Assembly: GCF_016433145.1 (NCBI RefSeq)
Contig: NC_058131.1
Span: forward strand, 724,459,938 to 724,523,937
Direction: 5' to 3'
Source of the DNA: Gracilinanus agilis
Lineage: Eukaryota
DNA: 64,000 nt
A program made the position numbers and the translations under genes. Shown piece by piece: positions 14,455 through 23,732 of this stretch. The notes under the pieces are model-generated. The model searched no databases and was not told the DNA's origin. It saw only the letters and a program-made list of their open reading frames with translations. Every line of letters starts with the position of its first letter. Position 1 is the stretch's first letter.

Positions 14455-14690
14455 TATATTACATTATGTTATATTATGTTATACTATGTTATATTATAAA
14501 TTACATTATATTAATTCTATTAATACATTATATTAATTCTATTCTAATTATATAATATTCTAATATATTATTCTATTGTTAGACTATATTATATTTTAAA
14601 TTATATTACATTAATTCTATTATCGAATTCTACTAAATCTAAAATATTCTATCTAATATATGTGTTATATTCTGTTATGTCATGTTATGA
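14455..14690. repeat. AT-rich low-complexity degenerate pentamer repeat (TATAT/TATGT/ATATT)
   Basis: Direct. Confidence 0.85.
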
Positions 14691-14770
14691 TATTGGCATT
14701 TGCGTCGCCACCTTTATGTCTGAGAGACCAGGAGATTTTCATAGACACAGGTCTCTAAAAGTAGAGGTTG

Positions 14771-15401
14771 TAGATAAACAGACTTGTACAAAAATATTTT
14801 TAGCTGCGCTCTTTGTGGTGGCAAAAAACTGGAAAGCGAGCGTATGCCCTTCAATTGGGGAATGGCTGAACAAATTGTGGTATACTTTGGTGATGGAATA
14901 CTATTGTGCTCAAAGGAATAATAAACTGGAGGAGTTCCATGTGAACTGGAAAGACCTCCAGGAAGTGATGCAGCGCGAAAGGAGCAGAACCAGAAGAACA
15001 TTGTACACAGAGACGGATACATTGTGGTAAAATCGAATGTAATGGATGTCTGTACTAGCAGCAATGCAATGACCCAGGACAATTCTGAGGGATTTATGGA
15101 AAAGAATGATACCCACATTCAGAGGAAGAAGTACAGGAGTGGAAACACAGAAGAAAAACAACTGCTTGAACACTTGGGTTGATGAGGACACGATTGGGGA
15201 TGTAGACCCAAAAAGACCACACCAATGCAACTATCAATAATATATAAATAAGTCTTGACTGACCACACATGTTAAAACCAGTGGAAATGCCAGTTAGCTA
15301 AGGGGGGGGGGGTTGATGGGGTGAAGGGTAAAGTAAAAACATGAATTATGTAACCATGGAAAATTTTTCTAAAAATAAAAAAAATTTCAAAAAAAATTAA
15401 A
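14771..15401 (+). mobile_element. 5'-truncated marsupial L1 with TSD
   Basis: ORF 14662-15030 translates the L1 ORF2 C-terminus (TCTKIFLAALFVVAKNWK...CPSIGEWLNKLWY...EYYCA), followed by the 3' UTR and A tail; 15-bp TSD taaaagtaga(g/a)gttg at 14756-14770 and 15402-15416. Confidence 0.93.
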
Positions 15402-18999: not shown

Positions 19000-21238
19000 A
19001 CTCGCCCTCAGGTTCCTTTCTGGTGTTTTGCCACACAAGCTACATGACCAAAGTCGCTCATGCTGTCTTAAAAAGACGTTCGTCTTCCTTTGTCCATGCA
19101 GCGTACGACGAGAGGCACTGAAGGGTCAGGAATCGACAGCCGGCATCAAGTTCACGCGCTGCCTCTGACACAGCCTTGCTGGGTGACCCTGAGCAAGTCA
19201 TTTAGCCCTTTAGCGCCCAAGGTAGCTCGGCAGAACCTCCACTGGGCATTTGTCACAAGAATGGAATACTAGATGGGGTCAAACACAAAGGAGCGAACAA
19301 GGAGAAGGTTTGAACCGAGACAATTTGACAAGCTTCAAAGGCCCTCCGCCCTAGAGGATTCTGACTTTCACCTGGGCCCAGGTTCTGGTGGCTGGAAGCA
19401 GAGAAGCCGGACATCTCTCAGGGAGGCCCGGCCATCAGCACCTGACATCTTTGGGAAAGAAAAAGAGAGCCAGGAGGAGAGCTTTGCTTTGTCCCATTCG
19501 CTTTCTGTGTCCTTCATCTTGTCCTCTCCAGTGCCAGGTTGTCCACCACTCTCACTACGTAGATGCCCGATTGCTCACTCCTTCCAAGAAAAACTGGCTG
19601 GGGGGAGCAGACAGTGGCCAAGCCCCCTCCCAGCTCTCAGCTCAATGAGATTCTCCTTGGCATGCCTCTTCCCATTGGAAGGGAGGACTCTAGGGCCATT
19701 TTCCACCTCTCTGGGCCCCGGGTATGAGGTGGGGAATGTCTCCCTTTGGGCCTGGGGAGGAATCTCCTTGGAATGTTTCCTTTGTGAGCGTTTGTCCAGG
19801 AGATCCAGGCCAGGGCAGTGCCAGGCGGCAGCCGTGCCCGCTGCTTTACAGAAATCATGACAATGTCTTCATTTTGATGGGATTCTCGCCTTTTTGCTTG
19901 GAGGAAGGAGCTCTCAGAGGACTCCAGGGCCAGGGCGGGCGGTGAAGAATCAGGTCTGGGAGAGCCCCAAATAGGCTTTGGGACCCGAGCGTCCGTGCCC
20001 CCAGCCTCCATCCTCCGGTATGGATGGGAAGGCTTCTCCGGCCCCCTTCAAGACTCCGGGCAGGGGAGGCTAAAGACTCCTGACCTCGCGTACTACGGTT
20101 CAGGGGGCCTTCGTTAAGGATGCCCACACCCACCTTTCCCGGGCCTGCCTCTCTCATGTGACTTTCTTAAGCCTCCTCTCAGCCCCCCTTTATGGGTTTC
20201 CGTTGATACACAATTAATCTGTTCTCTGGCGAGGGGAGAAAAAGCAGGCAGCACCTGAGGAGGACGAGTGTCAGATTCTAATCACCCTCAGCAGCTGTTG
20301 TCTCGGCATCACCTCTGGCCGACATGGGGGATGCTGCGAGTTACCACTCCTCGCCACAGCCCACCTCATTAGACTTGACCTGCCCAGCTGGGGATTTCAT
20401 TTGTGTTTTTTAATGGGCCCGGAGCCCGCACATCACGACACCTTATGCAGCCGGGCTCCTTTGTATCTCGGACAAAAGAGAACGAGGCGATTTGAGGAAA
20501 ATCAAAATTGAGGCCCGATCCTCGTGGCTGGTGGGCTGCCCACCGGAAGGGAGAGAACCTTCTCAGCTGCCCACTGTGGAAGGCAGAGCCGGGCTGCCTC
20601 TCGGAGAAGATAAATGCCTCTCCTGGCTTTGAAGCTCTCCGAGTTTGTACATCGCCTACAACAAACCGTCATTACGGGGCCCTCCGTGCATTTGGCAGCG
20701 TGAAGACAGTCCGCACATGGCCCCGGCTTCAGTCGGCACTTTCTGGTTTCCAGAGAATGTAGACCCCCCCCCCAAAAAAAAAGAGCCCGGATTCCTTTCT
20801 GTTGGACTATTGGCCACCCGAGAAGAACCCCGGTCCAGGCGGAGGTCAGAGTCTGTGGAAGAGGAGATGCTAAAATGGTGAGGAGGGCGAGGGGGGAGCT
20901 CGAAAAGAATAAATATCGCTGGTTCCTTTTCCCCTTTCCATTTATGTTTGTAATAAACTCACTCTCATACAATTAGCCTCAATTGTTTTGCTATCTTCAG
21001 AGGCAATAATCTGGGAAGCCTGGGGATTCGGGGAGTAATCCGTCTACCTGTGTTCATTTACCCAAATCACTATGGTTACAGGCAGGGCCAAGTGTTGGCT
21101 GGGAGGATCCTGGGAGCCCCCTTTCCCGCTCCTAATGACCTTTCTGCTCCTCCAATAACATCCCCCAGCCGGGGAGGCCGCCCGGCCCATTAAAGCCAAT
21201 TGCCTCTCTAGTTACTGAGGGACCTGGGCTTTTCCTCA
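19000..21238. promoter_or_regulatory. GC/CpG-rich candidate regulatory island
   Basis: CpG visibly denser than in the flanking TE-rich DNA; mostly unique sequence; ends in a gap. CpG o/e not computed. Confidence 0.4.
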
Positions 21239-21394
21239 NNNNNNNNNNNNNNNNNNNNNNNNNNNNNNNNNNNNNNNNNNNNNNNNNNNNNNNNNNNNNN
21301 NNNNNNNNNNNNNNNNNNNNNNNNNNNNNNNNNNNNNNNNNNNNNNNNNNNNNNNNNNNNNNNNNNNNNNNNNNNNNNNNNNNNNNNNNNNNNN
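21239..21394. other. Assembly gap (N run)
   Basis: Direct. Confidence 1.
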
Positions 21395-22839
21395 TGGCAG
21401 CCCAAGTCCCAGCAGGCCACACTCATCTGAAGCTGAAATCCAGACACTTGGACAGTGGAGGAGAGGCAGCGTTAGCAACCATCGGGCCGGTAATAAGCTT
21501 TGCATTAATTTTTTGTTTCTTAAAGGCACACCGCCAGGGTTGGCAGAGCCCAGGCAGCACACTGCCTGGAAGAAAGGTGAGACGTCTTCAGTCTGGGATG
21601 GGCTTGGGAGATGCCACCCAGCGCAGGCTCCCCAAAGAAAGGCGAGCCCCTCGTCCCCTGGTCCCTACCACAAGCACCCCAGGATCCCCGTCACTATGCC
21701 TAGGCTGGTGTAGGGCTGCCTTAGGGGTGCCGGGCGAGAAAATCCCAGTGAAGGAGAGGATTGGAAACTGAGGCCCGTTATGGGCTTGGGGGTGGCTTGC
21801 AGGGCACCAGGAAAGGCTGAAGATAACTCTGGATGTGGAGAGCCAAGTGGAGAAAAATGCATCTTTGGCCTATTTTCTCAGAATGCACAAACTCCCTATT
21901 AATTATGCATAGCCGTGCTTAATCAAGCTTCTTTTGCTGTGTTGACTGTAACCCCTCATTTGCTCCGTTTCAGGGGGGCAGGTTCAAAGGGGGATGGGAG
22001 TGACCCAGCCAGTCCAGGGAGGCTATAAGGGCCAGAAAAGAGAAAAGAGAGACCCCACGGACCTAACAAAGCCATCTGTGGCCCAAGGGTAGGGAGGGCT
22101 GCCCACTGCCACTGGGCTCATTCAGGGATCTGTTTTTCTGCTCAGGCATCTGCCTTTTAGTTTTATTTTCATTAAACGGGGAGAAAAAAAATGAAATGGA
22201 ATTTGTGCGGCAGAGTCAAGCCATTGAGGGGTGCCTCTGTGGGTCTGCAGGGAAAATCGTCACAAAACCAATATTATTAGCAATTAGGATAATCACAGCA
22301 ACAATGACAGCAAACCACTTGGATTTTGGCAGCACTTGGAGGCATACAGACCCTTTTCTCCATAGTGTACAGGACGATGCCCATTTGAGGGATATGGAAA
22401 ACCGGCCTCAGAAAAGAGAAGGGACTTGCTGGGTCAGATTGTTAATAAGTGTCCGAGCTGGAATTTAGCCTTGGGGTCAATTTTGTGGGATCAGAGGGTT
22501 CCATGGGGGGGTGGCGGTGAGCAAGAAGATCATGGGGAGACCAGAGAGTTTCAGCAATGTGTTCTTGCTTTGGCATCTCTATTTAGGCTGGAGGGCCCAA
22601 TCTCAGCTAACACATGTTCCTTGCTCCCAATAAAATTGTAATTGCAGCTTTAATGAGTAAATTTGTTAATTATTGCTCCTTACTTTTGGCATTCGATATG
22701 CTCAGCCTTTCATTCTTATGTGCATTGTTGAAGATTTATTTGGGAAAAGAAACTCCTCTGCCCCCAAGGGTTCCGTGGCCAGCGGCTGAGTCCCAAACCT
22801 ACATAGTTATCCCTAATCAGTCTCCAAGAGGGCGAGCCC

Positions 22840-23240: not shown

Positions 23241-23428
23241 CTTCTTTTTCAAAAACATACCTTGCTTAGGCTCTATTGGATCTCCCCCTTTCCCCAAAAG
23301 GAAGCAAGCTGCTTGGAGGTAGGAATGGGGGGAAGCTTTGTTTTTTGTTTGTTTGTTTTTGTATGCCCAGTGTCTGACACCTGGGATGCCGTTACTAATC
23401 CAATCAGTCAATCAATAATCATCTACAA

Positions 23429-23620
23429 CGGTCATTCCCAAACTTTTTTGGCCTCCCGCCCCCTTTCCAGAAAAAATATTCCTTAGCCCCTGGAAATTAA
23501 TTTTTTTTAAATTTTGATAGCAATTAATAGGAAAGATAAATGCACCTGCGGCCATCACCGCCTCCCTGGATCACTGCAGCACCCACCAGGGGGCGGTGGT
23601 GCCCACTTTGGGAATCACTG
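23429..23620. mobile_element. Complete hAT-Charlie MITE (192 bp) inserted in an L2 tail
   Basis: TIRs cggtcattcccaaact (23429-23444) and actttgggaatcactg (23605-23620; reverse complement cagtgattcccaaagt); 8-bp TSD atctacaa/atctacag at 23421-23428 and 23621-23628, resembling the Charlie NTCTAGAN target. Confidence 0.9.
23583..23595 (+). promoter_or_regulatory. CTCF core motif CCACCAGGGGGCG inside the MITE
   Basis: Exact match to the 13-bp core of the canonical CTCF consensus (TGGCCACCAGGGGGCGCTA). Binding not shown. Confidence 0.65.
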
Positions 23621-23732
23621 ATCTACAGCTCCAGTATGCAAAAGAGACAAAAGACAGCCCCTTCCCCGAGAAGCTCACAACCCAAAGCGGGAGACAACAT
23701 ACAAACAAGTAGCAAGCTACATATGGGTTAAA

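What the first reader, a model, noticed from the sequence alone, without database searches (positions are those of the whole stretch)
23429..23620. Intact hAT MITE carrying a perfect CTCF core plus an inverted CTCF-like twin: a possible transposon-spread insulator cassette
Seen: 16-bp TIRs, an 8-bp TSD (atctacaa/atctacag), CCACCAGGGGGCG at 23583-23595, and an internal inverted repeat caccgcctccctgg (23556-23569) versus ccagggggcggtg (23586-23598). The inverted repeat places a second, degenerate CTCF-like motif on the minus strand in divergent orientation. Known: TEs have spread CTCF sites in mammals (SINEs in rodents and opossum; the hAT element MER20 in eutherians), and divergent CTCF pairs mark domain boundaries. 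Inferred: this marsupial DNA-transposon family may have seeded insulators, and this copy sits among candidate enhancer blocks. I cannot name the family or say whether this link is already described.
Basis: partly seen in the sequence, partly recalled or inferred. Interest (0 to 1): 0.7.

Follow-up and report, generated by a model that had tools for sequence, protein, structure and literature searches.

The report
Transposon relic carrying a CTCF motif
A 192-base relic of a cut-and-paste (hAT) transposon carries a textbook binding motif for the genome-folding protein CTCF, but the motif is part of the transposon's own end structure, is already present in close relatives found in arthropod DNA, and is not shown to act as an insulator here.

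Summary
Window 23429-23620 is a real 192-bp hAT MITE with an 8-bp TSD (7/8), 16-bp TIRs (13/16), an exact CTCF core (CCACCAGGGGGCGGT, 23583-23597) and an internal inverted repeat.

New here: a metagenome scan with the 19-nt end found about 620-bp relatives in arthropod-like DNA. That DNA has CpG o/e 0.83-0.97 and a Pao retrotransposon. The window element is a clean internal-deletion derivative of these relatives (85% identity). The TIR, TSD and size match the "hAT1_NA" family published for Rhodnius, Bombyx and Hydra, so this is a family that moves between phyla, not a marsupial invention.

Six of nine distinct arthropod-hosted insertions carry the same exact CTCF 15-mer. Its G-rich half (AGGGGGCGGT) is the mirror copy of a subterminal repeat (ACCGCCCCCT) that sits 30 bp from both ends.

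The "twin" is another copy of that repeat. It is more than 3 mismatches from the CTCF consensus, so it is not a second site.

This scan has flagged the same family dozens of times elsewhere in this genome. TE-borne CTCF motifs are a known kind, so interest is modest.

The parts
23421..23428 (.). Left target-site duplication, ATCTACAA
   Evidence: It fits the family's target preference (T2, T4, A5, A7), which is seen in 36 distinct related insertions: T4 in 33/36, A5 in 29/36.
23429..23620 (+). 192-bp non-autonomous hAT element (MITE), an internal-deletion derivative of a ~620-bp element of the hAT1_NA type
   Evidence: Alignment A1 and blastn E 1e-17 to 1e-30. Identity to the consensus of five arthropod-hosted relatives is 163/192 = 85%. 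No ORF of note.
23429..23444 (+). 5' terminal inverted repeat, CGGTCATTCCCAAACT (two changes from the relatives' CAGTGGTTCCCAAACT in the first 5 bases)
23455..23463 (+). 5' subterminal repeat CCCGCCCCC (ancestral ACCGCCCCC), with its GCCCC starting 30 bp from the 5' end
   Evidence: the same repeat is at position 30 from the 5' end in all five full-length relatives.
23537..23538 (.). Internal-deletion junction. About 420 bp of AT-rich interior present in the relatives is missing between these two bases.
   Evidence: Alignment A1, columns about 142-592.
23556..23569 (+). Left arm of the subterminal inverted repeat (CACCGCCTCCCTGG). It is a further copy of the GCCCC repeat, decayed at 23563 (C to T).
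   Evidence: Not within 3 mismatches of the CTCF consensus.
23583..23597 (+). Exact CTCF core consensus CCACCAGGGGGCGGT. Its 3' two-thirds (AGGGGGCGGT) are the mirror-image copy of the 5' subterminal repeat, 30 bp from the 3' end.
   Evidence: Identical in 6 of 9 distinct arthropod-hosted insertions. 15/15 to the relatives' consensus.
23605..23620 (-). 3' terminal inverted repeat. It reads CAGTGATTCCCAAAGT on the minus strand, with an exact match to the published hAT1_NA TIR CAGTGATTCCCAAA.
   Evidence: PMC3845634 Table 1.
23621..23628 (.). Right target-site duplication, ATCTACAG

Best explanation
The feature is a dead, internally deleted copy (a MITE) of a Buster-type hAT transposon. It belongs to the family published as hAT1/hAT1_NA (TIR CAGTGATTCCCAAA, 8-bp TSD). 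This family occurs in insects and Hydra and, by inference, entered the opossum lineage by horizontal transfer some tens of millions of years ago. About 30-47 My is a rough upper-bound estimate from 10-15% divergence and a marsupial neutral rate of 3.21e-9 per site per year.

The element keeps 109 bp of the 5' end and 83 bp of the 3' end, the parts a transposase needs. These ends carry a short repeat, (A)CCGCCCCC(T). It occurs 4-6 times per full element and only near the ends, and one copy sits exactly 30 bp from each end in mirror orientation.

The 3' mirror copy reads AGGGGGCGGT on the + strand. Together with the preceding CCACC it spells the CTCF core consensus.

So the CTCF motif is inherited transposon end architecture (shown). 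The repeats are probably transposase-docking sites (inferred from how hAT/Buster ends work). Each insertion of the family therefore drops one oriented, ready-made CTCF motif 24-38 bp inside its 3' end (shown for the sequence). Whether CTCF occupies this copy is unknown. I put that at roughly 1 in 4, and a real insulating role at this locus at about 1 in 10.
For: - Anatomy and chance.
- Relatives: the 19-nt end gave 62 metagenome loci. Thirteen of them, making 9 distinct insertions, match element positions 110-192 at 83-90%. Six of the thirteen loci also match positions 7-114 at about 80%.
- Five distinct full-length copies of 576-638 bp have TSDs matching at 8/8 (four) or 7/8 (one).
- The alignment shows a clean internal deletion.
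- The host DNA of those contigs is not vertebrate-like: GC 34%, CpG o/e 0.83-0.97, no Alu-like hits, a Pao/BEL retrotransposon, and nearest Atlas clusters that are mostly Arthropoda. The window itself has CpG o/e 0.25.
- Published family: hAT1_NA has TIR CAGTGATTCCCAAA, an 8-bp TSD with TA at +4/+5, is 619 bp in R. prolixus, and has autonomous copies of 2,889 bp in R. prolixus and 2,916 bp in Hydra (PMC3845634).
- It is not OposCharlie1, whose TIR is CAGGGGTCCTCAAACT (PMC3621081 supplement 1).
- Repeat architecture: 4-6 GCCCC/GGGGC sites per element against 0.24-0.31 expected, at position 30 from both ends.
- Motif present in 6 of 9 relatives.
- The dyad folds better than shuffles in the window copy and in relatives: z -3.7, -2.3, -3.4.
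- Buster-type hATs need subterminal sequence beyond the TIR to transpose and carry family-specific subterminal repeats (PMC12637253; PMC4298943).
- hAT families are known to have entered opossum horizontally (PMC3621081; PMC11614815).
Against: - No opossum copy other than this one could be examined. Family-wide statements for opossum therefore rest on unchecked scan notes.
- I could not obtain the published hAT1_NA consensus, the autonomous element or a transposase. Family assignment rests on TIR, TSD, size and host match, plus 85% identity to unnamed metagenome copies.
- The hosts of those contigs are inferred, not named.
- That the repeats bind transposase is inference.
- Zhang et al. state that hAT1 is absent from deuterostomes, which conflicts with membership unless their criteria missed short MITEs.
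- A perfect core with a surviving CpG is also what a bound, protected site would look like.
Confidence: 0.8

Rival explanations
1. This copy has been exapted. CTCF binds the core in vivo, and the site works as a loop anchor or insulator between the CpG-rich region about 2.5-4 kb upstream and downstream sequence.
For: - The motif is an exact 15/15 match and the only strong CTCF motif in 64 kb.
- The core CpG survives, while 3 of 6 ancestral CpGs in the element are lost.
- TE-borne CTCF sites, including hAT-derived ones, are bound and used in other mammals (PMC7156512; PMC13399162).
- Schmidt's species-specific-word method could miss a family that carries a canonical word. Diehl et al. raise the same concern.
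Against: - There are no binding, methylation, Hi-C or orthology data.
- Core preservation is not beyond chance: 0.85^15 to 0.90^15 gives 9-21%.
- The motif came with the transposon, so its presence needs no selection.
- The opossum liver ChIP-seq study reported only MAR1 SINEs as lineage-specific carriers, with bound events 'in the hundreds'.
Confidence: 0.12
2. The element is a two-site 'cassette'. The main motif and the inverted twin are bound as a divergent CTCF pair.
For: An inverted repeat does exist and is conserved in relatives.
Against: - The twin (reverse complement ATCCAGGGAGGCGGT) lacks the CCAnnAG half of the core. It is not among the sites within 3 mismatches, which themselves occur at the chance rate.
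- It is one of several copies of the subterminal repeat.
- The two centres are about 28 bp apart, less than one CTCF footprint (general knowledge).
- The same dyad is present in arthropod-hosted copies.
Confidence: 0.02
3. The G-rich subterminal repeats are bound in the host by other GC-box or zinc-finger factors (SP/KLF-type, or a repressor that targets the transposon), so any regulatory effect of the copy does not depend on CTCF.
For: GGGGGCGG contains the GGGCGG core of GC boxes (general knowledge). The repeat occurs three times in this copy.
Against: Nothing was tested. The element lies in ordinary CpG-poor DNA, with CpG o/e 0.19-0.34 around it.
Confidence: 0.06

Closest known systems
hAT1 / hAT1_NA of Zhang et al. 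2013 (Genome Biol Evol, PMC3845634): Bombyx mori, Rhodnius prolixus, Heliconius, Manduca, Hydra, Mengenilla
   Same: The TIR CAGTGATTCCCAAA is identical. Both have an 8-bp TSD with TA at positions 4-5. The metagenome relatives (576-638 bp) match the 619-bp R. prolixus non-autonomous form in size. Non-autonomous copies arise by internal deletion. The distribution across phyla is patchy.
   Different: This copy is 192 bp and sits in a marsupial. The paper says the family is absent from deuterostomes. I could not align to their consensus, because no supplement is held.
Horizontally transferred hAT families of opossum (SPIN, OposCharlie1, hAT1, ExtraTerrestrial; Pace 2008, Gilbert 2010, as cited in PMC3621081 and PMC11614815)
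   Same: These are hAT elements shared between opossum and the blood-sucking bug R. prolixus. They form MITEs of about 190 bp, are about 10% diverged in opossum, and transferred 15-46 My ago.
   Different: It is not OC1: the TIR and body are different. Whether it equals Gilbert's 'hAT1' or SPIN could not be checked, because those papers are not held.
TE families that spread CTCF motifs: rodent B2/B3, dog SINEC_Cf, opossum MAR1_Mdo (Schmidt 2012), and hAT/TcMar-derived CTCF sites in human and mouse (Diehl 2020; PMC13399162)
   Same: A repeat whose consensus carries a CTCF core (M1 only) seeds many oriented motifs through a genome.
   Different: Those families have ChIP evidence, and this one has none. 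Here the carrier is a cut-and-paste MITE of foreign origin, and the motif is part of its terminal repeat architecture rather than SINE body sequence.
Subterminal repeats of Buster-type hAT elements (Buster1 TGGGTCGCG, Buster2 TGCGGCTC; PMC4298943)
   Same: Short family-specific repeats are confined to the roughly 100 bp inside each end, and ends longer than the TIR are needed for transposition.
   Different: The repeat here is (A)CCGCCCCC, and one copy happens to complete a vertebrate CTCF core.

Membership tests
hAT superfamily, non-autonomous (MITE) | 8-bp target-site duplication | tested here: met
   ATCTACAA / ATCTACAG, 7/8. The full-length relatives have TSDs matching at 8/8 (four distinct copies) or 7/8 (one).
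hAT superfamily, non-autonomous (MITE) | Short TIRs beginning CAG / ending CTG | tested here: met
   The 3' end is exact (…CACTG). The 5' end is mutated to CGGTC. Overall 13/16.
hAT superfamily, non-autonomous (MITE) | Derivation from a longer element by internal deletion, and no coding capacity | tested here: met
   A1: 109 bp + 83 bp of about 620-bp relatives. Stops in all six frames.
hAT superfamily, non-autonomous (MITE) | Cognate autonomous element encoding a hAT transposase | not testable with these tools
   No transposase ORF in the 62 loci. Published autonomous copies of 2,889 and 2,916 bp are known only from PMC3845634.
Buster-type hAT | Target preference nnnTAnnn | tested here: met
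   T4 in 33/36 and A5 in 29/36 distinct insertions that share the TIR. The window TSD has TA at positions 4-5. That this preference marks the Buster group is from the literature (PMC4298943 and my own knowledge).
hAT1_NA (Zhang 2013) | TIR CAGTGATTCCCAAA with 8-bp TSD | tested here: met
   Exact at the 3' end and 12/14 at the 5' end; Table 1 of PMC3845634.
hAT1_NA (Zhang 2013) | At least 80% nucleotide identity to the family consensus | tested here: inconclusive
   85% to the consensus of unnamed metagenome relatives of the right size. The published consensus was not obtainable.
OposCharlie1 (OC1) MITE | TIR and body of OC1 (CAGGGGTCCTCAAACT…) | tested here: not met
CTCF-binding site | Match to the core motif | tested here: met
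   15/15 to CCASYAGRKGGCRSY, and unique in the window within 1 mismatch.
CTCF-binding site | In vivo occupancy by CTCF and cohesin, with an unmethylated core | not testable with these tools
   No ChIP or methylation data are reachable.
Insulator / domain boundary | Insulation in Hi-C, or enhancer blocking | not testable with these tools
CTCF-spreading repeat family | Motif present in the family's ancestral or consensus sequence | tested here: met
   6 of 9 distinct arthropod-hosted insertions carry the exact 15-mer, and so does the relatives' consensus. For opossum copies there are only unchecked scan notes.
CTCF-spreading repeat family | Enrichment of the family in CTCF ChIP peaks | not testable with these tools
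   Schmidt 2012 tested only families tied to species-specific words and reported MAR1_Mdo.

The most novel reading that the evidence does not exclude
A hAT family that moves between phyla (arthropods, Hydra, opossum) arrived in the didelphid lineage already carrying a perfect CTCF core in its terminal architecture, and scattered thousands of oriented motifs. A sizeable subset is bound by CTCF and cohesin and has reshaped opossum chromatin loops. The 2012 opossum ChIP-seq analysis would have overlooked this because the family uses a canonical, not species-specific, motif word. That would make it a case of horizontal transposon transfer importing 3D-genome regulatory sites.
Probability: 0.2. Interest if true: 0.6.

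Novelty: new member of a known kind. Interest (0 to 1): 0.3.

Why it matters
Repeats that spread CTCF motifs are an established route for rewiring chromatin loops, so one more carrier is not a surprise by itself. What this case adds is the origin of the motif. It is part of the transposon's own mirrored subterminal repeat, and it is already present in arthropod-hosted relatives. Two consequences follow. First, a perfect motif in such a copy is no evidence of selection or function. This matters for the dozens of similar flags in this genome. Second, if the copies are bound, horizontal transfer would have delivered ready-made architectural sites to a mammal. That can be tested directly with existing opossum CTCF/STAG1 ChIP-seq data.

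Tried and rejected
So there is no paralogue pile-up and no check of the orthologous site in the related organism.
- A search for other copies in the window (blastn, TIR pattern) found none.
- I tried to reach opossum copies by searching the 52-aa ORF of the MITE in the protein collection. There were no candidates.
- OposCharlie1 was considered and rejected from the published consensus.
- Gilbert 2010, Pace 2008 and Gilbert 2012 are not held. The Zhang 2013 and assassin-bug supplements hold no usable sequence. So the Repbase/Dfam name, and whether this is Gilbert's hAT1 or SPIN, stay open.
- The sample ids of the metagenome contigs are not mentioned in any held paper.
- I tested whether a subterminal hairpin is universal among TIR-sharing families. 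Only 6 of 20 ends fold clearly better than shuffles, so I do not claim that.
- No PWM (MA0139) scoring was done, because I had no reliable matrix. I used the IUPAC consensus instead.
- None of the fetched contigs looked human: no Alu-like hits. The MDSQ/MDSP contigs and L031 have CpG o/e of about 0.41 and unknown hosts. I used them only in the end listing and looked at L031's truncated copy.

Full report
**1. Observation**

The sequence is as described.
- An 8-bp duplication, ATCTACAA (23421-23428) and ATCTACAG (23621-23628), flanks a 192-bp element at 23429-23620.
- The element's ends are inverted repeats. The 5' end is CGGTCATTCCCAAACT and the reverse complement of the 3' end is CAGTGATTCCCAAAGT, 13/16.
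- CCACCAGGGGGCGGT at 23583-23597 matches the 15-nt CTCF core consensus CCASYAGRKGGCRSY exactly. It is the only site in the 64-kb window within one mismatch, where 0.31 are expected.
- The internal inverted repeat 23556-23569 / 23586-23598 exists (13 pairs, one bulge). The 50 nt inside the 3' TIR fold as DNA at -15.7 kcal/mol, z = -3.7.
- No second copy of the element lies in the window.

**2. What it is**

Paralogues in the same genome were therefore out of reach.

A scan of metagenome contigs with the 19-nt 3' end (CAGTGATTCCCAAAGTGGG, which does not overlap the CTCF core) returned 62 loci.
- Thirteen loci, making nine distinct insertions, match element positions 110-192 at 83-90%. Six of those loci also match positions 7-114 at about 80%, roughly 420 bp further along.
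- The six full-length loci give five distinct elements of 576-638 bp, with 8-bp TSDs matching at 8/8 (four) or 7/8 (one).
- The alignment (A1) shows that the window element is the first 109 bp joined to the last 83 bp of such an element. It is a clean internal deletion at 23537|23538.
- Identity to the relatives' consensus is 163/192 = 85%, and 75/83 in the 3' part.

**3. Whose DNA the relatives sit in**

- Those contigs have GC 34% and CpG o/e 0.83-0.97, with no Alu-like sequence. The window itself has CpG o/e 0.25.
- One contig carries a Pao/BEL retrotransposon (Peptidase_A17, E 2e-50). Its nearest Atlas clusters are mostly Arthropoda (a lead only).
- No held paper names the samples.
- A full-text search for the TIR found one paper: Zhang et al. 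2013 (PMC3845634). Their 'hAT1_NA' has TIR CAGTGATTCCCAAA and an 8-bp TSD with TA at +4/+5. It is 619 bp in Rhodnius prolixus and 546 bp in Bombyx mori. Autonomous copies of 2,889 bp (R. prolixus) and 2,916 bp (Hydra) are known. The authors argue that it was transferred horizontally among insects and Hydra.
- The window TSD fits the target logo of 36 distinct TIR-sharing insertions: T4 33/36, A5 29/36, T2 22/36, A7 26/36. This is the Buster-type preference.
- It is not OposCharlie1, whose published consensus starts CAGGGGTCCTCAAACT.
- Opossum is known to have received several hAT families horizontally 15-46 My ago, shared with R. prolixus (PMC3621081; PMC11614815).
- 85% identity over non-coding DNA between a marsupial and arthropod-like hosts cannot be vertical inheritance. 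I therefore infer horizontal transfer.
- With the marsupial neutral rate quoted in PMC3621081 (3.21e-9 per site per year), 10-15% divergence gives roughly 30-47 My as an upper bound.
I did not verify it.

**4. Where the CTCF motif comes from**

- In the full-length relatives the pentamer GCCCC (or GGGGC on the other strand) occurs 4-6 times against 0.24-0.31 expected. It occurs only within about 60 bp of the 5' end or about 110 bp of the 3' end.
- In four of the five full-length relatives, one copy lies at position 30 from the 5' end (ACCGCCCCCT) and one at position 30 from the 3' end in mirror orientation (AGGGGGCGGT). In the fifth (L039) the 3' copy is mutated to GGGGGTGGT.
- The mirror copy plus the preceding CCACC is the CTCF core.
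- Six of the nine distinct arthropod-hosted insertions have the exact 15-mer, and the others differ by one to a few bases.
- The motif is therefore inherited terminal architecture of the transposon.
With the mirror copy it forms the dyad, which also folds better than shuffles in the relatives (z -2.3 and -3.4).
- By the CTCF consensus the twin fails. It is not among the 46 window sites within three mismatches, and that number equals chance.
- Its centre is about 28 bp from the real motif, too close for a second CTCF (general knowledge).
- Buster-type hATs need subterminal sequence beyond the TIR to move and carry family-specific subterminal repeats (PMC12637253; PMC4298943). The likeliest role of the repeat is transposase docking. 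This is inferred, not shown.
- An earlier follow-up in this scan reached the same reading on another copy (s1-176222).

**5. Is this copy a working CTCF site?**

This is unknown.
- The core is 15/15 identical to the ancestral sequence, but at this copy's divergence that happens by chance 9-21% of the time.
- Three of six ancestral CpGs survive, including the core one. This is not remarkable.
- Schmidt et al. 2012 did opossum liver CTCF and STAG1 ChIP-seq and reported only MAR1_Mdo SINEs as lineage-specific carriers, with bound events 'in the hundreds'.
- Their screen started from species-specific motif words. A family using the canonical word could be missed. Diehl et al. 2020 raise the same concern, and they find hAT and TcMar elements enriched for CTCF sites in human and mouse. 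A 2026 study also finds hAT subfamilies enriched at human CTCF sites.
- I put occupancy of this copy at about 25% and a real insulating role at about 10%.

**6. Comparison and novelty**

- As a kind of feature (a repeat family that carries and scatters a CTCF core) this is known.
- My searches found no paper tying this family to CTCF.
- This scan has already flagged the family many times on other DNA of this genome: 33 notes hold the words hAT, MITE and CTCF. The follow-ups all concluded 'real motif, known mechanism, binding untested'.

**7. Verdict**

It is a new member of a known kind, of modest interest. The most novel reading still open is that a horizontally transferred transposon imported bound CTCF sites at scale. 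Existing ChIP-seq data would settle that.

Noticed in passing
window 19200-21500: A GC-rich stretch (GC 0.53-0.56, CpG o/e 0.56-0.61 against 0.25 for the window) lies 2-4 kb upstream of the MITE, with a masked N block at 21239-21394 inside it. It may be a weak CpG island or promoter.
   Followed up: no
They lie 234 bp downstream of the MITE. I sent nothing from them to search tools.
   Followed up: no
L001-L062 (metagenome loci), the 3' ends listed: At least a dozen different hAT families share the identical 19-nt end CAGTGATTCCCAAAGTGGG but have unrelated subterminal sequence. Many have a C-run/G-run palindrome 5-30 bp inside the TIR (for example ACCCCTGGGGGGT, GGAACC..GGTTCC). Only 6 of 20 representative ends fold clearly better than shuffles.
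   Followed up: partly
PMC3845634 compared with window 23429-23620: Zhang et al. 2013 state that their hAT1 family is absent from deuterostomes. This marsupial MITE has the same TIR and TSD and is 85% identical to relatives of the size they report for R. prolixus. The statement probably reflects search criteria aimed at long copies.
   Followed up: partly
L039:9570-13229 (- strand): A 1,220-aa open Pao/BEL retrotransposon polyprotein (Peptidase_A17, Integrase_H2C2) lies on the same contig as a hAT1_NA-type copy. It was used only to judge the host.
   Followed up: partly
window 14662-15230 and 51270-51980: ORFs with the look of LINE-1 ORF2 C-terminal fragments (…VAKNWK…EWLNKLWY…). Seen in the ORF list only and not tested.
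   Followed up: no
L031:412-515: A truncated 3' fragment of the same family lies in a contig with CpG o/e 0.42 (host unknown, possibly a methylated genome). It shares the window-specific variants GGCCATCA and GCAGCAC, but its CTCF core is destroyed (TCACGGGGGGGGCGC).
   Followed up: partly
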